Origin: Anthoceros angustus
Taxonomy: Eukaryota; Plantae; Anthocerotophyta
Assembly (NCBI GenBank): GCA_010909165.1
Contig: MU008185.1
Span: 310,001 to 374,000 of the forward strand
Reading direction: 5' to 3'
Length of the DNA: 64,000 bases
The position numbers and the translations under genes were made by a program. Under the pieces are notes generated by a model, which saw only the letters and a list, made by a program, of their open reading frames with translations, made no database searches and was not told the origin of the DNA. This document shows positions 22,755 to 53,189 of the stretch, in pieces (within the stretch, counting starts at the first letter, position 1; each line of letters starts with the position of its first letter).

Positions 22755-23979
22755 ATAATGTTTCAAAGATGTGTACCTTATCCTTTCCGGGTGGTATAAA
22801 TTGCCCGATACTACTAGACAATTTTAAAGTCCCTAAATTACTGGATATTTTTAGAAAATCCCAAAATCTTCCATTGCTAGACATTTTTAAAAACCTGCAA
22901 TTTCAATAAAGAGCAGAACCCATAACCTATGGGTTATGTCAGGCAATCGTGTCCTGTTTGCAGGCTAGGGACGTAGATAGCCTCCCAGTCGTGGCCATCT
23001 AATTGATATTCTTGTATAAATGGTCCGTCCTCTCATCTCTTCTCACATAATAAATTGTTATGCCATAATATTTTAAAGGATAATTACTCTTGATTATATC
23101 TTATGTATATATTTTATTTAAAATAAAATATTCTATTAATTATCCATGTTAGTTTCATCTTCCAATATTATAGTGCAGTAAGTGATTTCGAAACACATGG
23201 CCTTCGAAGTTCTTCGTGATAACGAGGCGTATTTATTTTGAGATAAATATTATGTATTATATATTTGAAGACCCTTAAAAGGAGCAACACGTTTCAGGTC
23301 ACATGCGCGTGCTGGTTGAAGACTTTGAAAGAAACCTACAAGGAGAAATGAAGACGACTTTTAAAGGAATCTACATGCAGAAATGAAGACTCCTACAAGG
23401 AGTAGCGACTTATTAAACATATGCTTGTAATACCATCTATACATGTGTGGTATGTACATTATATTTGGATGTCTTATCTCTAAGGTAGTTTTTTTTACTC
23501 TCTTATCGATACTATACGCTAGGGGATGTATGTTGTGTGCTGTTATTGTTTGTGTTGTACTTATCCTCATATTTTAACTTAATAAAATCATTATTTATAA
23601 TTCAATAATTTATTTTATCAGTGAATATTTTTCCATACCATAAAGAAGGGTACCATAAAGATGATATGATCTAGAAGCTTTAGATGCTGAGAGAAAATTA
23701 ATAACTAACTAGAAATTTTTATAAACTTGAGTTTGCTTATTTGAAGAGGTAGTTTATTCAGACACTGAATGTCGGGTACCTAGTGTGGGGAGGCCGGGAG
23801 GAAGGAGAAGTTACCTACCTATGTGGCTTATTATTGCACTTATGATACTTAGGTCTGCTGATGGACATAAATGCACGAAGGTTGAAGCCAGGAGCTGGGC
23901 GGATCGGAGGTAAGGAAAGGCTTTGCAAGGGTGTGCGGTTGTCGGTTTCGATGCCCCTGGATCATTTCTCCCGCTCAGC

Positions 23980-26855
23980 ATGTCTCTCGAGTTACCTGCC
24001 TTGGATGACATAGCCAAACCAGCTTCCCAGAATGGTGGCCCTGCAGCTCCCCGTGTAGAGTCCCCTGCAATTGGGCTTCCATTTTGGCACCCGGCACTCG
24101 CTTCGGGTGCAGCCAGAGACGCGGCGTCTCTTGAGCCGGCAAATAGAGATGGAGCTGCTCCCGCCCCTGCCCCGGCACCTCCAACTGGAGTCGGAGATGG
24201 AAGCCATGGAAATGGAGATGGAGGGGAGGGGATCTCCCTTGCAGGCAGGGACGGAGGAGATGGAGGAGCTCCGGCGACTGGAGACGGGGACGGAGCTGTG
24301 CAGGCTGCAGCGGGAGATGGAGCTGGGAGTGCGATGGAAGGGAGGGAGGGAGCAGGAGCTGCAGCAGAAGAATTGGAAGGAGGAGCAGGGGGCGCGGCGG
24401 GAAAGAAGAAGCGGAAGCGGAAGCCCCGGGAGCTCTTTATGGACATGGAGGAGAATCAGGTGAGGGGGAGAGGGATGCGGCCGGTGAGGCAGCACGCACG
24501 GCCGCAGACTTATGATGAAGCGGCTCTCGACTCCATGATCGACGAGCAGATCGGGGACATTGCAGGGCCTGGGAAGCGGAAGAAAAAGCAGGTGGATACG
24601 GCGAAGGAGAACAACATGGAGGCCATGATTGGAGCCGCCATCGGCTTCTCTCGCGAGTTTCTGAGTGACGAGGAGGTGGCAGCTAATGTGCTGCCGAGCG
24701 ATACCAGCGCACAGGAGCGGGCCAATTACATCATGGTGAGGAATCACATCCTGACTAGGTGGCGGGAGAACGTGAGTGCGTGGTTGTCGCAGGACACGGT
24801 GATGGAGACGATTCAGACCAAGTTTAGAGGGCTTGTCTCGGTTGCTTACAAATTTCTCATGCAGTATGGTTACATCAATTTCGGAGTGGCCGCGGCTATC
24901 AAAGCCAACATTCCGAAAGAACCGAACAAGGGCACGGTGGTGATTATCGGATCGGGGTTTGCTGGTCTTGCTGCTGCTAGACAGCTGCTGGCCTTCGGGC
25001 ATAGGGTGGTTATTTTGGAGGGGAGGCAACGTCCTGGTGGCCGGGTGTACACTAAGAGGATGGAGGGAGTGACCTCGGGGGGCACCGTGGTAGCTGCAGC
25101 GGATATGGGAGGAAGTGTTGTGACGGGTGTCCATGGGAATCCGCTTGCTGTGCTTGCCAGACAGCTCGGGTTTCCTCTGCATAAAATCAGGGAGCCGTGC
25201 CCCCTGTTCCAGCCCGATGGGAGTCCTGTCAGGCAGGTGTTAGATAAGAAGATGGAGAAGCACTTCAATGATATCCTAGATGAGGTAAGCTTATACAGAC
25301 AGGAGGTGGAGAATGCCGAGGAGTTGTCCTTGGGTGGGGCGCTGGACGTTCTTAGGGCTAAGTTAGGTGTAGTGGAGACGGAGGAGGAAAGGCAGCTGTT
25401 CGATTGGCATGTTGCCAATCTCGAGTATGCCAACGCTGAGCTCCTTTCTAAGCTGTCGCTGTCCCATTGGGACCAGGATGATCCATATGAAATGGGAGGA
25501 GATCATTGTTGGCTGGCAGGGGGAAACGTCAGGCTTATAGCTGCCTTGGCTGAAAACATACCCATTTTTTATGGTAGTACTGTACATTCAATCACATACT
25601 CGGATACAGGGGTACAGGTGGAAACTGGTGATCAGGTGTTTGTAGCAGATATGGCGTTATGTACAGTGCCACTTGGTGTTTTGAAGAGGGGCTGTATCAA
25701 GTTCCATCCCGAGCTGCCGCAGAGGAAGCTCGATGCCATCCGAAGATTAGGGTTTGGGCTCCTGAATAAGGTGGTGATGCTGTTTCCCCAGACCTTCTGG
25801 GGCTCAGAGCTCGATCATTTTGGACACTTGACTGATGATCGCAGCACGAACGGTGAATTTTTCATGTTTTACAGCTATGCTGCAGTTGCTGGTGGACCTC
25901 TACTTTTGGCCCTTGTGGCTGGGCAGTCTGCTATCAACTTTGAGGATATGGCTCCTGTGGAGGCTGTCACTCGAGTGTTGGAGGTTCTCAGAGGTACACT
26001 TTCATTTTCTGTTTGAGTTTTCCCCTCGGTGGACAACAATTCGCAACCTTCTGACGTATTTGGTGGCCAGGAATCTACCAACCGCTTGGCATCACAGTGC
26101 CAGACCCTCTGCAGTCTGTCTGCACTCGTTGGGGGAATGATTCCTTATGCTATGGATCTTACTCCAACGTAGCTGTTGGGTCTTCAGGAGAGGATTACGA
26201 TATCTTGGCCGAGAGTGTTGGAGATGGAAGACTCTTCTTCGCCGGTGAAGCCACAAATCGTCGCTATCCTGCCACAATGCATGGGGCTTTCTTGAGTGGA
26301 CTGCGAGAGGCGGGCAATATCGCAGTCCGAGCTGCAGCGCGGCTGGCTAGCACTACCAAGTTGAGTCGAGGTATACAGAAGGATCCCACTGCGTGTGCTA
26401 ACTTTATGGAAGATATCTTTAGTGAACCGGATCTCAAATTTGGGTGCTTTGAAGTTATCTTTGATCCCCGAACTCCGGACCCTATGTCCTCTGTGCTACT
26501 GAGGGTGGTCTTGGTGGACTCCACTAGAAGACCCAGTGGATTCATAGGTGAAGGCCAGAATGGAGAACCATTGAAAGAACCTTTAAAGTTGTATTCTGTT
26601 ATCAGCCGGATTCAAGCTTTGCAGTTGATGGGAGTGGGGGGAGGAGACGAAATGAGATTGCGTTTTTTAATTGAGAGTCTTAGAGCCAGGCTTGTAGGGC
26701 GAAGGGGGCTTGGTGCCCATGGAGACGCCCTCGCCCATGCCGCAAAGTGGGCCCGAACAGGAGCCAGGCGAGATTCTGCCAGACCTGTCAAGTCCGGCTC
26801 AGCTGGGAACAGGCAAGCACCTTCACCTCATGGTGGAAGACTCCCCCCAAGTTGA
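23980..26855 (+). CDS. FLD: LSD1-like histone H3K4 demethylase (FLD/LDL clade; SWIRM + amine oxidase), intron 25994-26070
   Basis: [20 protein letters not shown]...GYINFG; FAD motif [15 protein letters not shown]; GGRVYT; [27 protein letters not shown]; C-terminal GGDEMRL...[11 protein letters not shown] versus LDL1/2 assignment is tentative. Confidence 0.9.
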
Positions 26856-33835: not shown

Positions 33836-35146
33836 GTGTAGCCAAATATAAAGGTTTCACTTTTATAGTTGCTTTATTGAATTACATTACATCCGTAATA
33901 TATTGGTAGTTTTTAATAATTTTAATAATCTATTAAATAACATAAAATTAATAATATATTTTATCAATGAACTAAGAGCTAGAAGAAAGGCAGAAAGTCA
34001 AGTAAGATAGTGTCTTATATTGGGCCACACAAATTGGGGGAATTTCTCATTGAAGCAAACAGGGTAACGCTTGAGAATATGGGCAATAACAAGCCAACAC
34101 CTGACAACCCACATAAGCAAGCTGATAGTGATAGCACCCGAACCTAATTGCAAAACCAAGCCGAGAAATAAGACCAATAAATTTAGACATGAAATCCCAC
34201 GCGTGTAGGTAGTAGCAATATCATAGAAAATAATATATTGAAGTTGCTTGATAATTCATTATCCCTAACAAGGATAAAGAAACCTTTGTAAATTGTGGTC
34301 GTATCTAGAAAGGGTGCGCGGGGCGCCGTCGAGAGACTTCTTGAGCACGAGAGTTGTTTAGTGCGAGACAGTTCGTAATAAAATTGACTCAACAAGATGC
34401 AAGCGGAGGAGGCAAAAACTGGAATATAAGTTGGAACTCTGATGATGGAAGATAATCGTAAATTAAATATTATATTTATGAAAAATGAGATATATCCATG
34501 AATAACACAGTGTGAAGGAGCTCGCTCGTTAGAGACAATATGGGGGATAAGACCCTGAAAGTATGAAAGAGGTGTGTGATTGGCAGGAAACATGCTCAAT
34601 TGTCAGCAGTTTTGATGTCACCAGTGTCACAACAGCTAGCGGAAATGATACTTCATTTCCAGTACATAAACCCGTTAATGCTCTTTCATGACTGAAATCC
34701 GATAACACACATTTTCGTTCTTAAAGTGCCCCTAATGGAAATTTTCCGATCATGCACAAAGGTGGGCTACTTGCCTTGCACGGAGCGTTGGAATCAGGTC
34801 ATCAGCTGCGAGACAATTCGCTACTCGTCCCCTGGGCATTGTCAAGTTTGGGCATCGCAGACTCGATTTGCCTAGTGCGTGGATGTGGTCCTTCGTAGTC
34901 TTGACCGCAGCAAGTGACGGATGCAAGCCATGGATGACTGAAGTTTGCCAGAGCACAGCGTGGTTTCGGGTCCATCTCGTCACGAGGGTGTCAGGATCTG
35001 ATGTCTTGATATCGCATATGTTCGTGGCACACTGCGGTCGATTTAAAGGTCTGGAGCTCCAGTAGAACGGCCGTCATCTGATGTGAAACTATCTCGGATA
35101 CATTATTCTGCGAGAAAAGTACATGCAGACACCAAATGCTTTCGTA

Positions 35147-36562
35147 TCATTCCCACCTGCGCCTGTCTTCCTCTTCATCAACCGAATGATACCAGGCAGG
35201 CCTATTCTTGAAGTTGCTGTATCTGTAGTTGAGCAAGAGCTCCTCGTCACAAACATCCCTGGTGGCCACGAGCACAAGTGTGCAGAGTTGTTTGTGTTTT
35301 TTCTCTGCTAATGCCTCCCTGCTTCTTCTAACCCACAGGAGGCCGCTCTGTTGCATCGGAATATCACTGTCCACGGCACAGGTGACGTTGGGGATGTAAG
35401 GCCTGAGCTTGATCCCCTCACCATCTAGGCAGAGGTTGTACGGACAGATCATGACATTTGGTTGTCCCCCTTTGGGAGGATGGTTTGCGAAATGCGCCAG
35501 GGCCAGAGGATTTCTCCTCTCTAAGACTGCTCCTTGAATCAGCCCCTCACCCTTCTTTCCACCACCCACCATTTGCCACAGCTTGTCCGAGGCCGACTTG
35601 GCCTCCCCTTGCCTGCTCTCCTCCTGCGGCTGCTCGATTCCTATACTCTTGAGGATGTGCTCCTGCACCTCTCTATCCCTCTCGGACATGCCATCCCAGA
35701 ATTCTCTCGTGTCCCCTCCTCTGCCCCAAGGATTGCCATCAATTACCAGCCCATCAAACCTTGAAACCAAGTACGGGTTGCCCAGCTCCACCCTCGGGTA
35801 ACCTGGAAGGTATCTATACTGTGCTGGTGCGTAGATCACCCCAGGATACATGGACACAACCGACCCCGCTCCAGCCTTTCCGGACACATACAGCCCATCA
35901 CCTGCTTCTCTGTGTGCGATTCTAGAAGGGTTGAGCTCCAGAGTGAATCCCATCTTCTCCTTGAACGCCTCCGAAACCTGGGCCCGGTTCAGAGGCAGCG
36001 TGGCAATCCTGCCACAAGCACCGTATCAACTGCAGTGCAATACCTGGCAGCCATGAAGACGACCGACTGTAAACAAGTGAGTCGCTTACTGAGCAGGTTC
36101 AGTCTCGCTCTTGGCTAGCTGCCATCCTCCGACAGCGAAGCTCAATCCGCTGGGCCGATTTTTCTTGGCCGTCTCTCGATCCTTTGCCTTTGATCTCTCC
36201 GACGGGTCCAGCAAGATGTTGTCCAATGCGCTGCAGATGACCCGCACTTGCTCACCGACGTTACCCTGTACTTCTTGCCTCCACTCTTCAAAAGCAGTCC
36301 TGCCTGCACGACCTTCCATGTCTGCTACCTGCTCATCTGTGGGAGAATCCAACTTCTTGTAGCTGGTGAGAAGGAAGAGACGGTGAGTATCAATTTCATG
36401 CTGAAACTGGCGCTTGTCCACGCCTTGAAGTGATGTCGACAGTCTCCCCCAGATCTGCAGATTCTCACAACACGATGCAAGCTGAGTCTATGATTTGCAG
36501 CTTATCTGTTGAGAGCAATGGCCATTGTTATGGTCGGTTGAGAATGTTACCTTGCGCAACAT
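35147..36562 (-). CDS. SETD9/C5orf35-like divergent SET-domain protein, multi-exon
   Basis: GDGLYVSG, YPGVIY, NPLALAHFANHPP, LVLVATRDVCDEELLLNYR, EEDRRRW; short first exon MLRK (36551-36562) predicted from splice signals. Confidence 0.85.
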
Positions 36563-36639
36563 CTTAGCCTTCACACTTCCAGCATTTGATCAAGCCATGG
36601 ATCTTTCTCCTCCTATCTGTGCATGGAAATCCTAACAGA

Positions 36640-36653
36640 AGGGTTTAGGGTTT
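36640..36653. promoter_or_regulatory. Telo-box in the short divergent promoter between SETD9-like and PPR genes
   Basis: AGGGTTTAGGGTTT; a similar CCCTAAACCCTA lies upstream of N6AMT1 at 29839-29850. Confidence 0.5.
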
Positions 36654-37089
36654 ATGGGACTATCAGCCCTAGCCAAGGTAGCCCAGATGGATTCGTGGGT
36701 CACCACCGGGCAGCAAATTTGCCTTCCTGTACTGTAGTACTGGCCTGTTTCAAGGAAGGGAAGAAGATGTAGCAAAAGGCCCGAGAGCCTGTTCCCTTTC
36801 ACGAAGGGAGATGTGAGTGTTTAGACTAGCATGGGTTGAGTGGGAAGGGGATAACTTTGGTTGGGGAGTGTTGCATTTCGTATGCCTCGTCCTGATAGGC
36901 TTGCCATGAGGAGACCGATTCATTGCTTGAGCAAAGGCTGGAAGTGTAGGGATAAGTGAAAATCGGCCCAAGCCAAGGCAACCCAGATTGATTCCGGGGT
37001 CAGTGTGCAGTAAATCTGCAATTCTGTGCTGCCTGGTGAAGGGATAGCACAAGGCCTTTCAATTGGAGTTCTGACTTGATGAAACTGAT

Positions 37090-39634
37090 ATGGCGTTAGT
37101 GGCGGCGGGTAGGAGGGCTGGAACACTTGTGCGGAGAGTTTGGTTTCTGGATGCTTGTCACAGGTGCTGGGCGGGGTCTTTGACGAGGGAAGGAGAAATT
37201 GCAGTGGATGTCCTAATTGTACTTGGCATTCCTCCGCTGGTTTGGTCGTGTTTCACATTCAGTACTGCAGCCTGCGTCAGAGCGGATACAAGCCGTGAGT
37301 CACTGCCTGCAGCTCAGTCGATTGCAAGAGAGGATCTGTGGAGAAACTTCTTCGCCGATCCTTCGCTGTGGTGGGACCACAGGTTGAGAAAGGTCTGCCA
37401 TTGAAGGATCCTATTACGCCAAGTGGTTATCGTCTTCTCATCGACTGAATTTTCTGCTGTTTGTTGCAGACAGATGTGAGCTACCCAGATTTCGTTCATA
37501 GTGTGACGAAGGATACTTTATGGATGGAGAGCTGGTGGAATCCCTCCTGGGTGAAGCCGAGGCTATCGACATTGAAACAGCCATCAGGTCCAGAAGAAAG
37601 GGCTCAATTCTTAGTGAAGCCCAGCGTCAGCCTCTCAATAGATCCAGCCAGGTATTTGTTCTAAACGGGTACTGTGGAAGTATGATAAGGCCATTGGGTG
37701 TATTACAAGTACAGTGTCGACTCTGAGCTCCTTTGTTTCACAGGTCTGGGAAAGAATGCGGATTGGCTGGGCGTATTGAAGCTGTGGACAGGCTGTGTAT
37801 AGAGGGGCGGCTAAAAGCAGCATTTTGTGCTCTTCAGTGGATGGACCAGCAAGGTGTTGAGATTCCAATGCATGTACTGTGTAGCATCGTGCAAGGGTGC
37901 ATACGGACAAAGGACCTGGAAACTGGAAGGTTGTTGCATGCCCTTGTCACTCAAAAGGGTCGCAACTCAAGTTTTTTGAACAGCAACATCATTCGGATGT
38001 TTGACTCATGCAACAGTTTGGCGGATGCCAATCAAGCATTTCGTGTGGTCCGTGAACCAGATACATACTCCTGGCAGGCCATTATTTCCACACATATCAA
38101 TCATGGGCAGAGCGAGGGAGCCATCAAGTTGTATATGGAGATGAAACAGTCGAATCTTAAACCAAATGCCTATGTTTATGCTGCAGCCCTCAAGGCATGT
38201 GCATGCGTAGGAGCCTTGGCAGAGGGTAGAATGATTCACCGACATATCAAACAGACGCCAAGTGAGATGACTGCTTTCGTGATGAACTCAGTCATTGACA
38301 TGTACACCAAATGTGGGAGCCTAGAGGAGGCACGTAGAGTGTTTGACAATGTCCGGGAAAAAAATCTGGTTACCTGGAATGCTATGATTGCAGGCTTTAC
38401 CCACAATGGTCGTGGTCAGGAAGCCTTGCGAATGTTTTGTCAAATGCAGGAGCATGGATTTGAACCAGACAGTATCACAATTGTGGGCCTCTTGAACGCT
38501 TGTGCTGGGACACAAGATTTAGAAAAGGGCAAGCAGTTTCATTCTCTGATAGTGGAAAAGGGAGTAGGTGATGAAATTCTTGTAGGAAATGCCCTTCTTG
38601 ACATGTATCTGAAATGTGGCAGCCTGAACGAGGCACGTCAGGTCTTTGACAGGTTGAAGAACAGAGACGTAGTGTCTTGGACTGCCATGATAGGAGGCTA
38701 TGGGAGTTCTGGGCATGGCCAAGATGCTATTAAACTCTTCCTAAAAATGCAAGAAGAGGGTCTGCAGCCCGACAAGGTGACCTTCCTGAACATTCTCAAA
38801 GCTTGTGGCACTGTTGGGGCACTGAACTTGGGGAGGAGGATTCATGCCTTACTTGAGGTCAGAGGGCTTGAGTCTGATGCAGTTGTCAGGAGCACGCTTC
38901 TTGACATGTATGCCAAATGTGGCAGCCCAGATGATGCTTGGAGCGTTTTTGTCAAAATGCCAGACAAGGATCTAGTGTCCTGGACTTCGGCCATCGGATG
39001 GTATGCTCAGCATGGGAATGGTCGGAGGGCCATTCAACTCTTCCAGCAAATGTTAAGAGAGGGACTGAAGCCGGATGACGTTACTCTGGTTTGTGTTCTT
39101 TCTGCCTGCAGCCATGCTGGGCTGTTAGATGAGGGTTATCGCCTGTTCTGCTCAATGTCTGACAATTTTGGCATCATTCCAGGAATGCGCCATTATGCGT
39201 GCATGGTTGACCTTTTAGGGCGTGCTGGCCTGCTCAATGAAGCGAAAGATCTTATTGAAAGAATGCCAATGGAACCTGAGGCCGTAGTCTGGACATCTCT
39301 ACTTGGCGCATGTCAAACGTATGGCAACTTGGAGCTAGGGAGACATGCTTTTGAATGTTTAGTGAAGTTAGAGCCTTCAAACCTGGCTGCATATGTCCTG
39401 ATGTCGAACATCTATGCTGCAGTTGGCAGGTGGGAAGATGAAGCAGAGGTGAGAAAGAAGTTGAGGAGTGCTGGAGTGAGAAAAATACCTGGCAAAACAT
39501 GGATTGAGGTTAGCAATGAAGTACACATCTTTTCAGTCAACGATGTAGATCACCCACAAAGAAAGAAAATCTACGAAAAGCTGGATTTATTGATGAACCA
39601 AATGCAGAACAGCCTAGGGTATGTTTCCAGTTGA
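37090..39634 (+). CDS. Organellar PLS-class PPR protein (E/E+, PG box, no DYW) with N-terminal OSB-type PDF motif
   Basis: Spliced leader EDLWRNFFADPSLWWDHRLRK|TDVSYPDFVHSVTKDTLWMESWWNPSWV; repeated DMYxKCG/SWTAMI motifs; HYACMVDLLGRAG; PGKTWIE; introns 37393-37469 and 37652-37743. Confidence 0.9.
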
Positions 39635-39736
39635 AAATGGACTCATGTAGCACTGGTTTAAGCGAACTGGATGGCAAGTCAATGTGTGAAGCAGATGTCT
39701 TACTGATTGCTAATTCCTTAGTCGTTGTGTATGTAG

Positions 39737-41921
39737 GGTGCTTGATGACGTGAGCATGGACGATGTTGTTAGGGAAAAATGTGAGAAGGAAAGCCTAAGT
39801 AGTGCACTTGATGCAGCTATTACGTCAAAAGTCCAGGGAAGCGTACTGTCAACAGAATGCTTACATCATCTGTTACAGGTGTGCATACGACAGAGAGATA
39901 TTCTCAATGGTAGGCGGATACTTTCATTATTGCTGGAAGTGGATAACGGCTTTGGCGTTCAAATCGGAAACAAGCTGATCCACCTGTTTTCTAGATGTGG
40001 AAGTCTTTCAGAGGCAAATGACACATTCCGTAAGATGGAGGAGCGGGATGCATATACTTGGCTGGCGATCATTGCAGCACACGTCCACCATGGGGAAGGC
40101 AAGAAGGCTATACAACTGTATAAGAATATGCGACTTTCAGACTTGAGGCCAAATCCAAATGTTTATGCTGCTGTCCTTAGAGCGTGCACAAGCACAGCAG
40201 CCCTGGCAGAGGGTAGGGTGATCCACAGACACATTATAGAAGCTGGTCTAGACAATGACGTTGTGGTCGCAAACAGTCTTGTTAATATGTATGCCAAGTG
40301 TGAAAGCTTGGTTGAAGCGAGAGAAACTTTCGACAAGATGCAGAAAAAATCTGTCGTTTCATGGACCACAATGATTGCAGGTTATGCCCAGCACGGGCAG
40401 GGTTGGGAGAGTCTGAGAATTTTCAGAGAAATGCAAGAAGAGGGTTTGGAGCCTAATAAGGTCACGTTCGTGAGTATCATCAAAGCATGTGCCACCCTGG
40501 GAGTCCTAGATGAGGGAAAGCAGATCCACACCCAGTTAACCAGGAAGGGCTACCAAGTGGATAACTTCGTAGGAAATGCGCTGGTTGACATGTACTTCAA
40601 ATGTGGGAGTCTGGAGGAAGCACTCAAAGTGTTCCTAAGTATGCCTAACAAAGACGTAATATCATGGACTTCTGTGATTGGGGGGTACACCCAGCATGGA
40701 CGAGGTTCTGAATCTCTGCAGTGGTTTCACCAGATGCTAGAAGCTGGTGTACGTCCCAATAAGGTGACATTTATAAACGTCCTCAAAGCCTGTAGCAACT
40801 CAGGAGCGTTGGATCAGGGGAAGGAGATTCATAGCCTGCTTGCCAAGACTGAGTACAAGTCGGACGTCGCTGTTGGGAGCGTGCTTGTTGACATGTATGC
40901 AAAATGTGGGAGGCTGGATGATGCTCAGAGAGTATTTGACCAGCTACCAGATAGGGATCTGGTGCTTTGGACGACACTGGTAGCTGGATATGCTCAGTGT
41001 GGACATGGGAACAGAGCTTTTCAGTTATTTCAGCAAATGCAAGCGGAGGGTGTTCAGCCAAACGAGATAGCCTTTCTGAGCATCCTGAAGGCATGTGCCA
41101 GCGTAGCTGCTCTTGATCAGGGCCGACGATTTCACTCGGAGCTGAAGAAAAGTATGCTGAAGTTGGATGGAGTCATCGGAAACACCCTTATTGACATGTA
41201 TGCCAAATGTGGCAGCCTAGAGGAAGCAGTTCTTCTGTTTGATAGCTTATCACAGAAAGATGTGGTCTCTTGGACCGTAATGATAGCAGGATTTGCACAG
41301 CATGGGCGTGCTCAGGAGGCGCTTGTGTTGTTTGAGCGGATGCAGCAAGAAGGCCTGAAGCCAAGTGATGTCACCATCGCCTGCATCCTCTCTGCCTGCA
41401 GTCATGCAGGCCTGTGGGCTGAGGGCCACCGTGTATTCAAAACAATGTCCCAAAGATTTGGGATAAGTCCGGACATCAAGCACTACACATGCTTGGTGGA
41501 CCTTCTAGGTCGTGCTGGCCACTTGTCTGAGGCGGAGGTGTTGTTGCATGAACTGCCTGTGCAGCCTGATGTTACACTGTGGATGTCCCTGCTTGGAGCA
41601 TGCAAAACTCAGGGCAACACGGACTTGGGGAGACAATGCTTTGAGCAGATTGTGAAGCTCGAACCTGCAAATGCAGCTGCTTACGTGCTGTTGTCAGACC
41701 TGTACACAGCAGCGGGCAGGTGGGAAGAGGAGGCAGAATTGAGGAGGAGGATGGCAGCTGCCAAAGTGAAAAAAGCACCTGGGAGGACCTGGATTGAGCT
41801 GAACAATCAGGTTCACACCTTTTTAGTGGAAGATAACAACCACCCAGAGAGGAAGCAGCTATATGCAAAGTTACAGGAGCTCGCCTCTGGGTTAGCAGGC
41901 TGCACACGAAATCCTGAGTAG
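39737..41921 (+). CDS. Second PLS-class PPR array (E/E+, PG box, no DYW), probably an exon of the upstream PPR gene
   Basis: ~728-codon open frame with PLS triplets, HYTCLVDLLGRAG and PGRTWIE; preceded by a branch point (CTAAT) and TAG acceptor at 39734-39736; no transit-peptide-like start of its own. Confidence 0.88.
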
Positions 41922-42600
41922 ACTGTCGTAGGCTTTAACTCCTCGGTGTCATTGTGAAGATTGCGCTGGTGTCGCCAAAACAGGACAGACGTGATCAGAG
42001 GGATGATGCGTTTCCATTCCCCATTTCCAGCACAGGGCGTAATACCATTAGGCGAAAATGGCTTTTACCGGGCAAAACGGTTGTAGCAATTGTCACATGA
42101 AACTGGAGAGAGGCACAAGCCAACTGTCAGCTGTGGCGACTTCAGATTGAAGACAAAATGTGGGGGCGATTAATGAGCATGATGGAGTCTGGTGATCGAG
42201 GCGCGACAGTTGTTGCGGTGTAGTTCGCCTCCCTGTGCATACGATGATTCTGCCCATGGCTGCTTCTCTGTGTCTTGTGCCTACTGCATCTGCTGGCTCC
42301 TTGGAGTGGGAGGCGCGGGAGCATGTCCCATTTTGTGCAGGATGGCAGATGCTGTCCTCTAGGGTTTGTGGTTGCGAGCTAGGTGATGGAAGCTTTGGTG
42401 GCGATGGGTTCAATGCATGAGCGTGCAATTGGACTCCTTGTATTAGGCACCATGCCCGGACACAATGTATCAATTGCTGGCAGAGCCTTTTGGTAAAGTT
42501 GTGGCATGGACAGTCAAGATTCCATCTCTTTCTGCCCTCTCTTTCCCAGCTGCCTTGTTGTGGACTAGCCTTGTCTGTCTGGCTCGCCAATCTGACCTCC

Positions 42601-45600
42601 ATGGCCTCATCATCTGGAGGTAAGAGGATATTCCACCCTCAGAAATGGGTTCCCTTACGCGCACAGGATATCAAGCCTGAGAACATGGCCCAACCTAGAG
42701 GCAAGCTTCCACCCTTGGACCCTGCAGTGGTACCGAAGACGGACACAATCGAGCCAATGTCCATTCTCTCTCATGATGCCAGTCCACCTCCTCGTAGTGT
42801 TCTGTCTTCGCATCCAGCAACCTTTCTTGAGTTGGATTCTACTCGTGCTGAGCAGAGCCAGTTTAGGTCTCAGTTCATTCCTCCTCGTCCGGAGGTCCGT
42901 GAGTCTGCGCCAACAGCCCACGATTTCAGAATAGCACCTTTGGGGTATCTAGATGACTCCAAGTCTCCAAGGCCGCGGTATCGCAAGAATTCTATGACTG
43001 GTCTCTCATCACCGCCTCAGCAACCAACCCGAGAAATGATCATGCATGTTGGCAGCAGGGAGGAGATGCCTGCCACAGCTGCTGTTGGGAGTGCACAAGA
43101 TGCTTTGCTCAATAGTCCTGAAGGAATGCCAGCTGGCTCCCATGTTAGCCTGGCCCCTTCAGTCTCAGCAGGTGCTTCAGCATCGCAGATTTCCCTCCCA
43201 AATTCTGCGCAGTATGTCGTATCAGAAGTGGCTGCTGAAACAGCGATTGTGATTGATCATCCTTCTGAGGTCTCCACCAGCAGCCCAGGTGGGGCAGCAG
43301 ATATTCCAGTTGGGAACCCTGAGAGTCGTCCATCTGCAAGCAGGTTTAGTAGAGATACCATCTCATCCTCATCCAAGAAGACTTCGGTTGTGCACCAAAA
43401 GGGATTCGGGAAAGGAGGAAGTGCAGAAGCTCCTTTCAGGGAAGGAGTGCATCGAAATTTCACACAGGAGAACATGGATGCTGCCGAGCAGGACATGCAT
43501 CGGAAAATGGTTCAAATCCAATCTTCCTGACTGCTACAGCTTCCTTTTCGAACAAGAATTAATGGCAAATTTTTAAGCGTTTTTACTTATGACTGCTGCA
43601 GCTCACTCCTTAGACTGGAACATTTTGGGGTAGAGGTCTGTTCACCCATAAGTTTGGTGGTCCTTGATATTGTGAAATTCACAGGGTGGTGGTTTATGAT
43701 GATGTCGATTTGGGGGCTAACCATGCGTTCCTGCTTGTGGGCAGGTTTCAGATACTGTGACAAGGGCTAAAGAAAGAGTCGAATTGATTGAAAAGGATAG
43801 CCATCCCAAAGCACCTACCTTCGGCAGGTGCTCAGGCTTCCAACGCTGGGCATATAAGCGACGACTTAAGAAAGCTGCTGAGGGGGTTTGTTCATCCTCA
43901 TTGAACTGTGAAGATTTGTCCCCTTGCTCCATTCGTTTATTAGTGTTTTTCCTGACACTCTCTATCTCCAGACCAAAAAGTGGAAAGTTCATTGGAGCCC
44001 GTGGCTGGAGTCTCTGAAAGCAATCGAAGGAGCCTTTGGATCAGCCGTGATGCTGACTTTTGCTTTCCTACGATGGGTGCTCTTTCTAAATGTGATGATC
44101 GCTGCAATATGGGTTGGAATGTTGATAATCCCTTTCTGGGTTAAGCCTCCACCCGGTTACTCATGGAAGTTATTCACGAAGCCAGGTTTCAAGGCAGTTG
44201 TACAGGTTGCTTGCACTTGCGTCAGCCGTTCTTTTTTGCTGAACCTTGCACAGATTGTTTGATGGTCAAAGTGTCCCACTAGCTATCCAACTCGTCGAAG
44301 CAGGCCTGCATAGCATGTGGATATTGCTTTGTCACCAATCAATTTCTGTGTCATACTAGCAATGGACATGTTTTTCCACCACCTCTAACTTGATCTCTCT
44401 CAGGCATTGGCTCCTAGATTGTAGGGTCTGCATTTCAAGTGTTCACATGTGAAGCTCGAATGGGGTGTCCTCTGGTCTGTTATGTGTTCACCAGAACCAC
44501 ATGTATGCTTGTATTATATCAGTGTTACTTATGATAACTCACTCGAAGGTATGGTGAAGGGTGATGCATTAGAGAGGACGTGGGTGTATTTCGGAGGTTA
44601 TTTCTACAGCCGAGCTGACCAGCCTGGTGCATATCGTGTTGATTGGGCATATCCTACTGCAATTGCCATAATGTTCCTTGTTAGCTTGATCGGTCTACTT
44701 GTTAGGTGAACCATGTGATACTTCATACTTGCGTATATTTTGCTCGCTCCTGCTTTAATGGGATTCCAGGCACGTTCTGGATGACTTCAGTTCAGCCGCT
44801 AATTTTGAATACGGAACTGACCTGCAGGCCTGGCTCTCATCGTGGCATGTATTCTCTTTGCTGCATATGCTTGCAGGATAGCATCAAGGATAATGGGCAG
44901 TGGTGATGCTGCGATGCCATATAAGAGTAGTGTGTTTCCTTGTTCAGGCCTGGTGTTTACCTCCTGGGACTTCCACGTGACTTCTCATGATGTAAGCTTA
45001 ACCTGAGCCTTTTGCAGCTGATTCCTCTATGGAGTTCTTGTGATCCTCCTTGCAGGGAGGTCATTTCTTACAAACTGAAGTGGATTCAACTGCTAAATGG
45101 GATGACAGGCAGCAACAAAGCTGAGGCGGAGCATTCGGACAGAACTGCAGGAGCTGATAGCAGATATTTCAAGCAAAGCTGTGACAACTGGAGTCACATG
45201 GAGGGACCGTCTTGTAAGTTTGTCCTCCTCAGTCTGCCTGGTTTGAAGCTGCTGCCTGTGAAGCATAACCCATGGAGCATCTTGTTTGGATCCTTTTTGC
45301 ATCATGCAGCCTCAAATTCCCGTGTTGATGGCAGGGCTATTTTGCTGCCTTTGTCTTGTGGCCACTGTCCCTGGGTGCTAGTGTGGTGGCTATAGTTTTC
45401 CTTGTTAAATATGCTGGCAAAATCAACAACAAAATTGGTTTTGCACTTTGTACCTTCCCTCTGTGTTTCAGAATAGCTAGTTGTGTGAAATAGATTTAAA
45501 CTTATGCATTGTTTTGAGCACCGACACAAAGAGTTTTCGGAATTTGGGGTCTGCAATGTTATAACAAGGGTACGTCTCCTCAGGGACTGGATTTGGACAA

Positions 45601-47139
45601 CCTCTACTTTTAGCGGCCCTGAATGTAGTAGGACCCATGATCACTCGTCTTATTGTGGCAATTGAGAACTGGAAACCAGCTGTGCACGATCGGGTTCTCC
45701 TGGTGAAGCTCTACTTGTTGAGAGCTATCAACCTTTCTACGCTTATCACAAGGTTTGCCATTTGCGGAATCAGCCCGAATGTCTAAAAAAACCATGTTGC
45801 TTGTCCGAGAGGTTCTACGAATCTGTGACCATGCTTGGCTTACAACCCAGGCTCTTTATGATGCTCAACGGTGCTCGACGTGAACGTGAAGGGGAACGTG
45901 AGTATGCAGATTGCTCAGTATCAAAGTCCTCGTGTGGAGATGGATACATCTGCTGCACAAATGTGAAGCTTGGAACGTGGGGTGTTTGCACTGTGGACCA
46001 GGTATATTGCTTGCAGCAATCTTGCATTGAACACATCGAACTGTTACTGGACATACAAGTTCGATGAGAGTCTTTTGAAGGGAGCTTCTAATATCCTTTT
46101 GGTGGATGTGCAGTACTTGAGGTGCGTACCGACCTGTGTGGAAAACACAGTTGGGGCGCAGCTCATCAGGCTTATCATTACTACGACCCTTATCAACAAT
46201 GGCCTGGAGCTCCTCACAGGCTTCGTTACTCTATGGGTATTCAAGGTTCGTTCGTTCTTTGGCATTGATCATGCAAGTTCTAGTTGCAAACCCCTGGTGC
46301 AGAGCTGACAAGGTCTTTTGTGACAGTCTAAGAGGCAAATGTCAGTAGAGAACATGGCTCTTGACATTTTGTACCTTGAAGCCCTCATCTGGATCGGCTC
46401 CTGTTTTGCTCCTGCCACAGCACCTTTGGCGGTGATAGTCAATCTCGTCACCTTCTACTGCATGAAGGTAAGCACATACCTGGTTCCTCCTTCGTAAAGA
46501 AGATAGCCAGAACATAACCCATCGCTCGTGCTGATGTCTACAGTTATCCCTGACAAAAACATGTTCGGCCCTGGAGAAGCGATACAGTGCGTCTCGAACT
46601 TCCAACGTCAGCTATGGCTTGCTGTGTCTCACATTAATTTTGTGCAGTGTCCCAGTATCACTTCTTTTGGTGCAAAGCACTACAAGCTTTTGTGGGCCTG
46701 TGCGCAACGAGAGAACTATGTATTCGGTATTATCAACATACATTCAGGTTGGGCTGAACAAACTCTATTTGTCAATGCCAGATTGGCTGACGCGTACTGA
46801 TTGCGGGCGGTATTTTGCTGCAGAAAGCACCCAGTATTGTGTGGATCGTGCTTGAGTGGATTGGGAATCCAGGCATCCTGATAGGAATCCTGGCAATCTT
46901 AGCTGTCAGTTTGGTGCTGCTCAGGTCTCAGCTCGCCAGATCTACACAGCACCTGAAAATGACCACAAGGGAGCTCGATCTTCAAAAGCGTGAGGTGGTT
47001 GAAAGATCCTCCTTCATGCGCAGTCAGGTACCCCAGCCCAGCTTTCCATGTCTTGCCTTCCCATCCCAGAATCAAATCACTTTGTTTTGTTGAAACATTC
47101 TTTCTGCCTCCCAAGCAAGGGAACGAATCTAGGCTCTGA
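42601..47139 (+). CDS. TMC: TMC (transmembrane channel-like) family protein, multi-exon
   Basis: Colinear TMC motifs: PWLESLKAIEGAFGSAVMLTFAFLRWVLFLN; VYFGGY...YRVDWAY; VFTSWDFHV; IVAIENWKP; signature CVENTVGAQLIRL; LIWIGSCFAP; YSASRTSN; SFCGP; WIGNPGILI. 3' end approximate. Confidence 0.88.
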
Positions 47140-50246: not shown

Positions 50247-53189
50247 ATGAGTGGGCGGCGTGAATCCTATGGGGACAGCAGGGTGGCAGGATCCTCGCAG
50301 GCTTTTAGTTTCCTCAATGCTGGGGGTGGGAGAGCCCAGAACCCGCAGCAGAGGAGCAGCTTTCCCTTCTGTGGGGATGGAAGAAAGGAGCAGCTCTTGA
50401 CCAGGTTGAATGATCCAGACCTGCAGTACGTGCATTCTTCCCAATCTGCCATCACCACGACTCTGTCCATCGGGACGGACACGCCCAGAGAGATGGATGG
50501 TGGTAACCTCTACTCCGCGGGATGTTGGTCCTGGGGCCCGAAGATTGATTGTCCAGCGGAAGCTTCCAGGGATGGGCGCGGCCAAGCCAGCTCCTCCGGG
50601 GGGAAGAGGAAGAGAGCAGCGAAGGGGAGTGCTTTGAAGGAGGATCTGGGGAGCAGTCTTGTGCTGGGGCAAGGGAGCTCCCCTATCGACATCCGGCCCA
50701 GTCAAGGTGCTGCCAGCTTTTCGGGTGGCAATTTCTGCTTTGATGTTGATTCTCCCACGGCTCTGTCGTTGGGTCAGATGGATCCTATCTCGGAGAGTCC
50801 GGACAGTCAAGGCTCGTTCTTGGGGTCTTCTGTGAGGTCCAGGGCGTCTGATGGGTTTCTGTCCATTGGGTCTGGATGTGACGGACTTTTGTTCAGTCAG
50901 CTGGACTGCAATCAGTCCAGAGAGTCCAGGGACTCTGGTGCCGTTTACAATCAACCTGGTGTAGACTACAACCTGAATTCGGGTGTACAGTTGCAGTTAG
51001 GTCAAAGGGGGAATCTTGGTGAATCTGTGACGAGAGGTGGGCGGTCATTTGAGGGCACCAGACGAGGGGGCCTGTCTAGGCACATGGAGAAGAGTCCGGG
51101 TTTTGTGTTGGAGCTTGGGTCCATGAGGAATGCGTCTGGCCAGAGTAGAGAAGGACAGAACCTTTCCAGCATGAGGGAGTCCCAGAGTCAGTCGGGTATG
51201 CTATTAGAGCTGGGATTGAGTGAAAATGTGCTGGATAATCGGGAAAGCGTCAGAGCATCTGGTGGTCCTGTGCCTGTGTTGGATGAGGGGTCTTCGTCCG
51301 CTCGATGGAGGAATAGTGGTGGTTTTATGCCGTCTTTGCTGATGGGAAGCCCTCATCTAGGGCCCCCTTGCAGTCAGCTACGTGAAGAACATTTGCCGAA
51401 AGTTTCCAGGCCCGCAGAGCCTGTGCTGGAGTGTCATCTGAATAGGGTGGAGCAGGAGCTCCCGACGAGTATGAGAGCATCAACCAGTTGCACGACGTCC
51501 ACCACTTCAGCATCTGCACCACTATCTGAGAAAGTGTCGAAAGTGTGCAAGTTCCGTGGCTGTGGGAAAGGAGCTCGAGGTGCATCTGGCTTGTGTATAG
51601 CCCATGGAGGAGGTCGCCGGTGTGAGAAACAAGGGTGTAACAAGGGAGCGGAAGGACGTACTGTGTACTGTAAGGCACATGGTGGCGGGCGAAGGTGTCA
51701 GAAGCTGGGGTGCACTAAGAGTGCTGAAGGGAAGACAGACTACTGCATAGGTCATGGCGGGGGACGGCGCTGCAGCTCTGAGGGCTGCTCTAAAGCTGCC
51801 AGAGGTCGGTCCGGGCTGTGCATTAGGCATGGTGGGGGAAAGAGATGCCAGATTGAAGGGTGCACAAAGAGCGCAGAGGGATATTCTGGGCTTTGCATTT
51901 CTCATGGAGGTGGCAGAAGATGCCAGTTTCAGGGTTGCACCAAAGGTGCTCAAGGAAGTACCATGTTTTGTAAAGCGCATGGGGGAGGAAAGCGATGTAT
52001 GATTGCAGGGTGTAACAAAGGGGCAGAGGGAAGTACGCCGCTTTGCAAAGGCCACGGGGGTGGCAAGAGATGCATGCACGAAGGGGGAGGAATATGCAGC
52101 AAGAGTGTGCACGGTGGGACAGCCTTCTGTGTTGCCCATGGTGGTGGCAAGCGCTGTGCTGTCGAAGGCTGCTCGAAAAGTGCTCGGGGGAGGACGGATC
52201 ACTGTGTTCGGCATGGAGGAGGAAAGCGATGCAAGTTTGAAGCTTGTGGGAAGAGTGCTCAAGGGAGTACAGATTTCTGCAAGGCTCACGGTGGAGGCAA
52301 GCGGTGCCAGTGGGGTGTAGAGGGATCACCATTTTTTGCGTATGCATCTGATGGTGTGTCTTGGGCCGGGGGTACCTTGAAACCAGAGCCTTGTGAGAGA
52401 TTTGCACGGGGGAAGACTGGCCTTTGTGCAGCTCACAGTGGGCTTGTACATGACACTAGGGTCCATGCTGGTTCTGTCATTGGCCCTGGCCTCTCTCCTG
52501 GCCTGTTTCGAGGGCTTGTTCCAGGACCCACACTGGCCAAAGGAACAGCAGATCCATCAGGAAGCACAACAGGCCTGACAGAAACTGCAAGCGGAGATTC
52601 TGAAATGCGTGATTTTGGAGAATCTGGCATAGATTCTAGTGAAGATGATCTCTCACGAATGGAAACTGCCAACGCGAATTCATGGGCGCCACCATTAACA
52701 GGAGCTACAGAGTCTGCTTTGGACAGTGGGTTGTCAGTGGTGGGATCAGCTCTTGGTGCTTCCTCCAGGTCCCTTCCACAAGGAACCAGTTCCATGACTG
52801 GAGCATTGGTCACTCCCTCAGCAGCTCCTCTGAGTGTCAGTTCAAGCAGTTATCCACCGTCCCAGACTCCATCACTGGGATCATTTATTCCACCAAAGGT
52901 ACTGGTTCCTTTGTCAATGCAGAAATTGGGCGCTGCTGACATAACCTCCTCGAGCCAGGGCAAGCTCAGTGAGGTCCTCACCTCGAGGACCTCCGATGAT
53001 GGAGCCTTCAACATGAACTCTCTTTCCCTTCCGGAAGGTCGGGTGCATGGTGGCGGCCTGATGGAGATGCTAGCAAGAGATCCTGGTATTGGGAACAAAG
53101 TCGACCGACACCTGAGTGCATCCAAGGTTAGTAGCCAACACCAATGGCAATCTGGGGCCCTGTTTTCACCAGCAGATGAATCTCCTTGA
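50247..53189 (+). CDS. WRKY19-like/At1g64140-type protein with CxxxGCxKxAxGxxxxCxxHGGG zinc-finger repeats (no WRKY domain)
   Basis: 980-aa intronless ORF with 10 full and 1 partial C3H repeats and a conserved C-terminal PEGRVHGG. Confidence 0.92.
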   Translation: MSGRRESYGDSRVAGSSQAFSFLNAGGGRAQNPQQRSSFPFCGDGRKEQLLTRLNDPDLQYVHSSQSAITTTLSIGTDTPREMDGGNLYSAGCWSWGPKIDCPAEASRDGRGQASSSGGKRKRAAKGSALKEDLGSSLVLGQGSSPIDIRPSQGAASFSGGNFCFDVDSPTALSLGQMDPISESPDSQGSFLGSSVRSRASDGFLSIGSGCDGLLFSQLDCNQSRESRDSGAVYNQPGVDYNLNSGVQLQLGQRGNLGESVTRGGRSFEGTRRGGLSRHMEKSPGFVLELGSMRNASGQSREGQNLSSMRESQSQSGMLLELGLSENVLDNRESVRASGGPVPVLDEGSSSARWRNSGGFMPSLLMGSPHLGPPCSQLREEHLPKVSRPAEPVLECHLNRVEQELPTSMRASTSCTTSTTSASAPLSEKVSKVCKFRGCGKGARGASGLCIAHGGGRRCEKQGCNKGAEGRTVYCKAHGGGRRCQKLGCTKSAEGKTDYCIGHGGGRRCSSEGCSKAARGRSGLCIRHGGGKRCQIEGCTKSAEGYSGLCISHGGGRRCQFQGCTKGAQGSTMFCKAHGGGKRCMIAGCNKGAEGSTPLCKGHGGGKRCMHEGGGICSKSVHGGTAFCVAHGGGKRCAVEGCSKSARGRTDHCVRHGGGKRCKFEACGKSAQGSTDFCKAHGGGKRCQWGVEGSPFFAYASDGVSWAGGTLKPEPCERFARGKTGLCAAHSGLVHDTRVHAGSVIGPGLSPGLFRGLVPGPTLAKGTADPSGSTTGLTETASGDSEMRDFGESGIDSSEDDLSRMETANANSWAPPLTGATESALDSGLSVVGSALGASSRSLPQGTSSMTGALVTPSAAPLSVSSSSYPPSQTPSLGSFIPPKVLVPLSMQKLGAADITSSSQGKLSEVLTSRTSDDGAFNMNSLSLPEGRVHGGGLMEMLARDPGIGNKVDRHLSASKVSSQHQWQSGALFSPADESP

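What the first reader, a model, noticed from the sequence alone, without database searches (positions are those of the whole stretch)
37090..41921. One leader, two complete PPR arrays: phase-matched splice sites allow alternative or fused RNA-editing factors
Seen: only ~100 bp separate the stop of array 1 (39634) from array 2, which starts right after a branch point and TAG acceptor (exon start 39737) and has no targeting peptide. The leader donor at 37651 (AG|GTATTT, phase 2) is in frame with both acceptor 37744 and acceptor 39737. A second strong donor near the end of array 1 (GG|GTATGT at 39618/39619, also phase 2) joins array 1 to array 2 in frame, bypassing the stop. Three products are therefore possible: leader+A, leader+B, or a ~1500-aa leader+A+B protein with two PLS-E+ modules. 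Inference: modular splicing could give one gene two organellar RNA-editing specificities or a bivalent PPR. PLS PPR proteins normally carry a single array.
Basis: partly seen in the sequence, partly recalled or inferred. Interest (0 to 1): 0.8.

Follow-up and report, generated by a model that had tools for sequence, protein, structure and literature searches.

The report
One gene, two PPR arrays joined
Two neighbouring reading frames for organelle RNA-binding (PPR) proteins are really one four-exon plant gene: splicing removes the first frame's stop codon, so one protein of about 1,500 residues carries two complete RNA-recognition modules, an arrangement I found in no relative and no paper.

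Summary
Two PLS-class PPR frames, A (37744-39618) and B (39737-41921), each end in E1/E2 motifs and a truncated DYW stub. They follow a two-exon leader, and every proposed splice site is GT..AG and in frame.

Transcript contigs decide between the three proposed products:
- **Leader to A:** this junction is used in all three related species.
- **A to B (39618^39737):** it is seen directly in two independent studies of a sister species. Depth arithmetic implies it in a third species and in the window's own species. It removes the stop at 39632-34 and gives a 1,514-codon frame.
- **Intron retention:** the window's own species also keeps this 118-nt intron in about half of its RNA, which would give a 791-aa leader+A form.
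- **Leader to B:** no sign of this junction, and none of a separate start for B.

So this is one gene for a tandem double-module PPR, not a modular switch. Both arrays lack indels across species at about 5-6% divergence, and their RNA-code residues differ.

None of 257 relatives has two E modules, and no paper found describes one. Whether the protein edits RNA is untested.

The scan has often noted the PDF-type leader on other DNA of this genome, but never this double array.

The parts
37090..37392 (+). Exon 1: start codon, Arg-rich N-terminal presequence, and the first half of an OSB-like PDF motif (...DPSLWWDHRLRK)
   Evidence: ORF and frame. An in-frame stop lies at 37072. Contigs X1 rec1, X2 rec14 and X14 rec8 cover it and splice at its 3' end.
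37393..37469 (+). Intron 1, 77 nt, GT..AG, phase 0; it splits the PDF motif
   Evidence: Removed in contigs of X1, X2 and X14 (table 8: 37390|37468). Splice sites. Depth in X1 shows no retention.
37470..37651 (+). Exon 2: second half of the PDF motif (TDVSYPDFVHSVTKDTLW...) and a linker
   Evidence: No Pfam hit. The motif was recognised by eye and by scan note s1-680484.
37652..37743 (+). Intron 2, 92 nt, GT..AG, phase 2
   Evidence: Removed in X2 rec14 and X14 rec8. In X1 this is inferred from bin depth: 6.14 observed against 6.15 expected.
37744..39618 (+). Exon 3: PPR module A, about 15 P/L/S motifs plus E1, E2 and a PG-box stub of a lost DYW domain. It ends at the G of the ancestral 'GY(V/I)PD'.
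   Evidence: Pfam PPR families and E_motif at 74.8 bits. 101-residue PLS periodicity. tblastn with DYW proteins stops aligning at 39607-39625.
39619..39736 (+). Intron 3, 118 nt, GT..AG, phase 2. It holds the stop codon of frame A (39632-39634). Its donor GG|GTATGT is formed by the remnant Gly-Tyr-Val codons.
   Evidence: Spliced out in X2 rec17 and X3 rec22. Retained in X1 rec4 (39590-39765). The X1 contigs break exactly at 39619 and 39736, as expected of a spliced/unspliced bubble. Sites.
39737..41921 (+). Exon 4: PPR module B, about 18 P/L/S motifs plus E1, E2 and a PG-box stub, then the stop at 41919-41921
   Evidence: Pfam PPR families, E_motif at 58.7 bits and Eplus at 24.8 bits. Segmentation. 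Contigs of all four runs cover it without indels up to 41898.
41885..41898 (+). Unused donor-like site CTCTGG|GTTAGCAG in B. It is homologous in position and phase to A's donor.
   Evidence: Sequence. All four runs read straight through (table 8).

Best explanation
This is one nuclear gene of four exons, not two genes.

**Shown.** The mRNA joins a two-exon leader to PPR module A and then to PPR module B. The leader carries a presequence and an OSB-like PDF motif. The third intron (39619-39736) contains module A's stop codon. Splicing from the donor GG|GTATGT to the acceptor at 39737 continues the frame into B, giving a 1,514-codon open frame. In the window's own species the same intron is also retained in a large share of the RNA. 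That form ends at ...GYVSS* and would give a 791-aa single-module protein.

**Inferred.**
- Origin: two old PPR paralogues came to lie head to tail. A lost most of its DYW domain and B lost its own leader. B's family-typical phase-2 acceptor was then captured by a donor created from A's remnant codons.
- Function: after import into an organelle, the protein binds RNA through two arrays with different code residues. Like other E+ type PPR proteins, it would need a DYW deaminase supplied in trans. It could serve two editing sites, or clamp one long target.
For: - **Splice sites and frames:**
- **A-to-B junction in RNA:** X2 rec17 joins 39423-39603 to 39736-41219. X3 rec22 joins 39423-39603 to 39736-40017. 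These are two separate studies of organism B. In both, bin depths equal what the spliced contig alone predicts (24.4 against 24.5; 35.3 against 35.3).
- **Organism C (X14):** the 147 unlaid letters of rec10 fit exon 4 by depth.
- **Organism A (X1, identical to the window):**
  - rec3 ends at 39619, rec5 starts at 39736, and rec4 spans the intron.
  - Both flanking bins carry the same surplus, about 187 depth-nt. That equals a 30+30-nt junction unitig at depth about 6.3, against 9.7 for the retained form.
  - Introns 1 and 2 show no retention in X1, so DNA contamination does not explain the retained intron 3.
- **One transcript chain:** overlapping contigs cover 36826-42300 in X2.
- **Coding constraint:** there are no gaps in 1,349 + 1,484 nt (X2) or 1,578 + 1,227 nt (X14) of the arrays at 4.5-6.1% divergence. 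The 5' region has 17-26 gap letters in about 600 nt. Organism B has 9 fewer bases just before the donor, which keeps the frame.
- **Both modules intact:**. The P/S code residues are canonical and differ between A and B.
- **No DYW anywhere in the window:**
- **E+ proteins use a trans deaminase** in angiosperms: PMC11121751, PMC7076377.
Against: - All RNA evidence is from assembled contigs, not raw or full-length reads. No single record spans exon 1 to exon 4.
- In the window's own species the junction is inferred from contig ends and depth. It was not seen as a laid record.
- No protein evidence exists. An internal E1-E2 module has no known precedent, so one module could be a passenger.
- Divergence in the arrays (about 5%) is only modestly below that of the leader and UTR (about 8%). 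I could not compute dN/dS.
- The retained-intron form would have a 2.3-kb 3' UTR and may simply be degraded.
- The window's species is absent from the protein databases searched, so the public annotation could not be consulted.
Confidence: 0.75

Rival explanations
1. These are two separate PPR genes. The A-to-B junction is a read-through (conjoined) by-product, and B is normally made from its own promoter and the ATG at 39756 (MDDVVREK...).
For: B has an in-frame ATG 6 codons after the acceptor. The window's own species keeps the intron in roughly half of its RNA. A and B are only 45.6% identical, the same level as to lycophyte PPRs, so they were once separate genes.
Against: B has no targeting peptide. 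In organism B (X2, X3) the depth at the junction is fully accounted for by the spliced contig, with no unspliced or separately started form. In X1 the unspliced contig runs from exon 3 across the whole intron, which is retention and not an internal start. The frame is kept across species despite a 9-nt indel next to the donor.
Confidence: 0.1
2. The fused mRNA is real but the fusion is functionally neutral or decaying. Only one module, or neither, still does a job, and the other is carried along.
For: An internal E1-E2 module is unprecedented among the 257 relatives checked. Both modules have lost DYW. B's extreme tail is not conserved: organism B has a 1-nt deletion at 41898. Sequence constraint on the arrays is only moderate. 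Earlier scan notes report many broken PPR copies elsewhere in this genome.
Against: Both arrays are open and free of indels in three species. They keep canonical T/N/S at position 5 and D/N/S at the last position of the P and S motifs. Both E motifs score well above the Pfam cut-off.
Confidence: 0.2
3. One reading: a modular gene whose leader is spliced alternatively to A or to B, giving two single-array factors as well as the fusion.
For: The leader donor (37651) is in phase with both acceptors, and leader+B would be an open 889-aa frame.
Against: No 37651^39737 joint was seen. Contigs of X2 and X14 run unbroken through 37651^37744. For X1, bin depth places the remaining 78 letters of rec1 on the start of exon 3. 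In X1 the surplus depth left and right of intron 3 is equal (187 against 189 depth-nt), which leaves nothing for a second junction at 39737. Contigs can hide rare forms, so a minor isoform is not excluded.
Confidence: 0.05

Closest known systems
E+ (E2-terminated) PLS-class PPR editing specificity factors of angiosperms, which work with the trans deaminase DYW2 and NUWA (PMC11121751, PMC7076377)
   Same: P-L-S triplets, then P2-L2-S2, E1 and E2, then a short stub of the DYW domain ending near 'GY'. There is no deaminase of their own, so catalysis must come in trans.
   Different: Here two such modules sit in series in one polypeptide, so module A's E1-E2 stub is internal. There is an OSB-like PDF leader. 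The plant is a non-seed plant in which trans-acting DYW partners are not established.
PLS-DYW proteins of lycophytes and ferns, such as Diphasiastrum complanatum O6H91 proteins (P0051, P0061, P0095)
   Same: These are the best sequence relatives of both arrays, at 44-48% identity over about 600-670 residues. They align up to the 'GY' position.
   Different: They carry a full DYW deaminase and a single array. The window's modules stop at GY.
Very long single-array PLS proteins (P0121 at 1,424 aa, P0123, P0129 and others)
   Same: Similar total length, about 1,400-1,500 aa of PPR repeats.
   Different: None of the six scanned has more than one E motif, and where present it is C-terminal. They are one long tract, not two complete modules.
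Conjoined or read-through genes formed from tandem neighbours
   Same: An intron spans the upstream stop codon and the intergenic gap, joining two formerly separate coding units in frame.
   Different: No independent transcript of the downstream unit was seen, and the downstream unit has lost its own leader. The fusion looks fixed, and it is shared by three species.

Membership tests
PLS-class PPR, E+ / E2 subgroup | Tandem P-L-S motif triplets (35/35-36/31-32 residues) | tested here: met
   Pfam PPR, PPR_1, PPR_2 and PPR_3 at E 1e-36 to 1e-90 for both frames. Exact 101-residue periodicity, with about 15 motifs in A and 18 in B.
PLS-class PPR, E+ / E2 subgroup | E1 and E2 motifs directly after the last S2 motif | tested here: met
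   PF20431 E_motif scores 74.8 bits (A) and 58.7 bits (B) against a cut-off of 27.3.
PLS-class PPR, E+ / E2 subgroup | Short E+ / PG-box stub and no deaminase core | tested here: met
   PF20430 scores 24.8 bits in B (cut-off 24) but only 17.6 in A. Alignment to DYW proteins ends at the GY position in both. No DYW_deaminase hit, and no DYW remnant anywhere in the 64 kb.
PLS-class PPR, E+ / E2 subgroup | One array with one C-terminal E module per polypeptide (the architecture of described members; from my own knowledge of the Lurin and Cheng classifications) | tested here: not met
   The spliced frame carries two complete modules. 0 of 257 relatives has two E modules, and none of the 6 longest scanned has more than one.
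PLS-class PPR, E+ / E2 subgroup | Organelle import and site-specific C-to-U editing with a trans DYW partner | not testable with these tools
   Only an Arg-rich N-terminus was seen. No targeting predictor, organelle genome or editome was on hand.
PPR-DYW editing enzymes | C-terminal DYW cytidine deaminase domain (HxE, CxxC) | tested here: not met
   No PF14432 hit in A or B. tblastn with six DYW C-termini finds nothing beyond 39625 or 41930 in the window.
PDF-led PPR genes of this genome (a class known only from this scan's notes) | N-terminal OSB-like PDF motif split by an intron, followed by a phase-matched PPR exon | tested here: inconclusive
   The motif WWDHRLRK|TDVSYPDF...LW is split by intron 1, which RNA confirms. 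There is no Pfam hit. I did not compare it with other members (notes).
Conjoined (read-through) gene pair | Each parent gene also gives its own independent transcript | tested here: inconclusive
   The upstream unit alone appears only as an intron-retention form in X1. No separate start for B was seen. Contigs cannot show transcript starts.

The most novel reading that the evidence does not exclude
This is a natural bivalent PLS-class PPR: one polypeptide with two site-recognition modules of different specificity. Each ends in an E1-E2 stub that recruits a deaminase in trans, so that two organellar RNA sites (or one extended target) are served together. In one species, regulated retention of the stop-containing intron toggles between the one-module and two-module forms.
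Probability: 0.3. Interest if true: 0.7.

Novelty: new variant of a known kind. Interest (0 to 1): 0.55.

Why it matters
PLS-class PPR proteins are described as one RNA-binding tract followed by one C-terminal E or DYW module. Models of editing-site recognition align that single tract to the bases just upstream of the edited C.

A conserved, expressed protein with two full modules, one of them internal, opens several direct tests:
- Can an E1-E2 module work when it is not at the C-terminus?
- Can one factor couple two sites?
- How do new PPR architectures arise? Here a splice donor was born from the leftover Gly-Tyr-Val codons of a lost deaminase domain.

It also warns annotators against splitting or discarding such models as fusion errors. 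If both modules work, it is a natural template for designer PPR proteins with two targets.

Tried and rejected
- **Leader-to-B junction and a separate start for B:** not seen.
- **Polyadenylation inside the gap:** no AATAAA-like signal in 39619-39800.
- **A DYW exon downstream of A or B:** tblastn with six DYW C-termini finds none in the 64 kb. B's homologous donor-like site at 41890/41891 is read through in all runs.
- **Recent exon duplication as the origin:**
  - Introns 2 and 3 and their flanks show no convincing DNA similarity.
  - A and B are 45.6% identical, the same as to lycophyte proteins.
- **Orthologues or the public annotation:**
  - The word search with B gave no hit above 48% identity.
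  - The exhaustive representative search gave none above 50%.
  - B's N-terminal 110 residues gave no hit.
  - An exact look-up of the ATG-started B frame found nothing on record.
  - The species is evidently missing from these libraries, so these blanks say little.
- **Double-module relatives:**
  - 0 of 257 relatives has two E modules.
  - Two apparent internal E modules, in P0193 and P0130, proved to be a mis-extended DYW model and a weak false match.
- **Literature:** searches for double, tandem or fused PLS arrays or internal E/DYW domains found nothing relevant.
- **Earlier scan notes:** none mentions a second case of two arrays.
- **Left out by rule:** the joined 1,514-aa sequence was never built for, or sent to, any search or fold. 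Exons were searched apart, by reference.
- **Not possible here:** dN/dS and PPR-code target prediction. I had neither the sister species' letters nor an organelle genome.
Full report
**Observation.** The window holds two long frames on the + strand, A (37733..39634) and B (39738..41921). Both are PLS-class PPR proteins with E1/E2 motifs and no DYW deaminase. The Pfam PPR families score E 1e-36 to 1e-90. E_motif scores 74.8 bits (A) and 58.7 bits (B) against a cut-off of 27.3. The E+ motif scores 17.6 (A) and 24.8 (B) against a cut-off of 24.
- donor AGCCAG|GTATTTGT at 37651/37652;
- acceptor TTTCACAG|G, exon start 37744;
- stop TGA at 39632-39634;
- donor CCTAGG|GTATGTTT at 39618/39619;
- acceptor GTATGTAG|G, exon start 39737, with CTGAT and CTAAT branch-like sites 30 and 23 nt upstream.

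Phase arithmetic, done without joining any sequence, gives open frames of 1,514 aa (leader+A+B), 791 aa (leader+A, intron retained) and 889 aa (leader+B).

**RNA evidence.** One run (X1, organism A) holds 92% of the stretch's sampled words and matches the window without a single difference. Runs of two relatives (organisms B and C) match at about 94-95%. The runs are recorded only as 'RNA?', but their contigs lack introns, so they are cDNA.
- **Intron 1** (37393..37469, 77 nt) is removed in X1, X2 and X14.
- **Intron 2** (37652..37743, 92 nt) is removed in X2 rec14 and X14 rec8. X14 rec8 runs from the 5' flank to 39318, that is, leader plus A.
- **The A-to-B junction** is seen directly in two studies of organism B. 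X2 rec17 joins 39423-39603 to 39736-41219. X3 rec22 joins 39423-39603 to 39736-40017. Five letters lie between the two pieces in each.
- **Indel next to the donor.** Counting the shared G's, organism B has 9 fewer bases than the window just upstream of the donor, so the frame is kept.
- **No unspliced form in organism B.** Bin depths in X2 and X3 equal what the spliced contig alone predicts: 24.4 against 24.5, 35.3 against 35.3, 9.47 against 9.48 and 13.7 against 13.7.
- **Organism C (X14).** rec10 has 147 further letters beyond 39604. The depth of the next bin fits their lying on exon 4.

**The window's own species (X1).** The picture differs here.
- rec3 ends at 39619, rec5 begins at 39736, and rec4 (39590-39765, depth 9.7) spans the intron.
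- This is the signature of a graph bubble whose other arm is the spliced junction. The shared G's place the break points exactly there.
- Both flanking bins carry the same unexplained surplus, about 187 and 189 depth-nt. A 30+30-nt junction unitig at depth about 6.3 would add exactly that.
- Introns 1 and 2 show no retention in X1 (8.68 against 8.69; 6.14 against 6.15). Genomic DNA therefore does not explain rec4.

My inference is that about 40% of this RNA is spliced and about 60% retains intron 3 in that sample. The retained form ends ...GYVSS* and has a 2.3-kb 3' UTR.

**What was not seen.** There is no 37651^39737 joint. Contigs run unbroken through 37651^37744 in X2 and X14. In X1 the listed piece stops at 37648, and bin depth places its remaining 78 letters on the start of exon 3. 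The equal surplus on both sides of intron 3 leaves no room for a second junction at 39737. Contigs drop rare forms, so a minor isoform is not excluded. There is no poly(A) signal in the gap. No DYW exon or remnant exists anywhere in the window.

**Anatomy.** Both arrays have a strict 101-residue P-L-S period, with about 15 motifs in A and 18 in B. Each is followed by E1, E2 and a PG-box stub that ends at the G of the ancestral 'GY(V/I)PD'.
- **Donor.** The donor of intron 3 is made of the remnant codons GGG-TAT-GT. B keeps a weaker look-alike, GG|GTTAGC, at the homologous place. It is not used.
- **Code residues.** The P and S motifs carry canonical code residues, which differ between the modules. 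The P/S read-out is roughly G?YUUGGG for A and U?CAUAGAUA for B.
- **Acceptors.** Both acceptors lie 38-40 residues before the first L motif, at the same place in each array. This explains the phase match as heritage.
- **Age.** A and B are 45.6% identical, no closer than either is to lycophyte PLS-DYW proteins at 44-48%. Their introns are not alignable. The fusion therefore joined two old paralogues and is not a recent exon duplication.
- **Leader.** It carries an OSB-like PDF motif split by intron 1. The scan's notes report this on many PPR genes of the same genome. I did not test that class further.

**Constraint.** At 4.5-6.1% divergence the arrays show no gaps in X2 (1,349 + 1,484 nt) or in X14 (1,578 + 1,227 nt). 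The 5' region has 17-26 gap letters in about 600 nt. B's last few codons are not conserved: organism B has a 1-nt deletion at 41898. I had no letters of the sister species, so dN/dS was not possible.

**How unusual.** The protein libraries lack this species: no hit exceeds 50% identity. Full-sequence HMMER scores add up over repeats, so a double-module relative should rank near the top.
- Of 257 proteins retrieved, 138 have an E module and none has two.
- Two apparent internal E modules were artefacts.
- Six proteins of 1,424-1,526 aa have at most one E motif, at the C-terminus.
- Seven literature searches, and readings of three of the papers found, turned up no description of two PLS-E modules in one protein.
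- Hornwort proteomes were not searchable, so I cannot say how common this is within the lineage.

**Mechanism.** The gene structure, the in-frame splice over a stop, its presence in three species and intron retention in one are shown. The rest is inferred.
- The product is probably imported into an organelle. It has an Arg-rich N-terminus, but no predictor was run.
- It probably binds RNA through two arrays.
- Lacking a deaminase, it would depend on a DYW protein in trans, as angiosperm E+ factors depend on DYW2 (PMC11121751, PMC7076377).
- Whether both modules act, and on what, is open.

**Limits.**
- By rule, the joined model was not assembled for any search or fold; exons were searched apart.

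**Verdict.** This is one gene for a tandem double-module PPR with a facultative single-module form, not a three-way modular switch. It is a new variant of a known kind, of moderate interest.

Noticed in passing
window 37079-37099: A 6-codon upstream ORF (ATG AAA CTG ATA TGG CGT TAG) overlaps the main start codon at 37090. Further upstream ATGs lie in 36597-36906, if the transcript really starts that far up.
   Followed up: partly
window 35100-37090: RNA contigs that carry the PPR leader run far upstream: X1 to about 36551, and X14 rec8 about 1.5 kb beyond 36700. They probably merge with a neighbouring or antisense transcript (minus-strand ORFs at 35147..35953 and 36086..36421). The true transcription start of the PPR gene is therefore unknown.
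   Followed up: no
window 41922-43900: Contigs continue from B's stop through 42300, and by their lengths to about 42800-43900. That reaches the neighbouring TMC-like gene noted at 42601-47139, so either the UTRs overlap or there is read-through between the two genes.
   Followed up: no
window 41898: Organism B (X2, X3) lacks one base here. This shifts the last approximately 7 codons of module B and moves its stop, so the tail after the PG-box stub is not conserved (table 4).
   Followed up: partly
window 37325-37555: An OSB-like PDF motif (WWDHRLRK | TDVSYPDF...LW) in the leader is split by intron 1. It has no Pfam hit. It was noted separately by the scan (s1-680484), and the notes report it as common on PPR genes of this genome.
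   Followed up: partly
window 23923-26016 (+): A long frame with SWIRM and flavin amine-oxidase domains, that is, an LSD1-type histone demethylase-like gene.
   Followed up: no
window 50247-53189 (+): A 980-aa frame with seven WRKY19-type zinc-finger repeats (PF24906, 235 bits).
   Followed up: no
window 38196-38943 and 40253-41561: Very high summed contig depth and many odd 'joints' in these bins come from transcripts of other PPR paralogues that match the conserved motifs at 88% or more. They are not features of this gene (tables 2, 5 and 7).
   Followed up: partly
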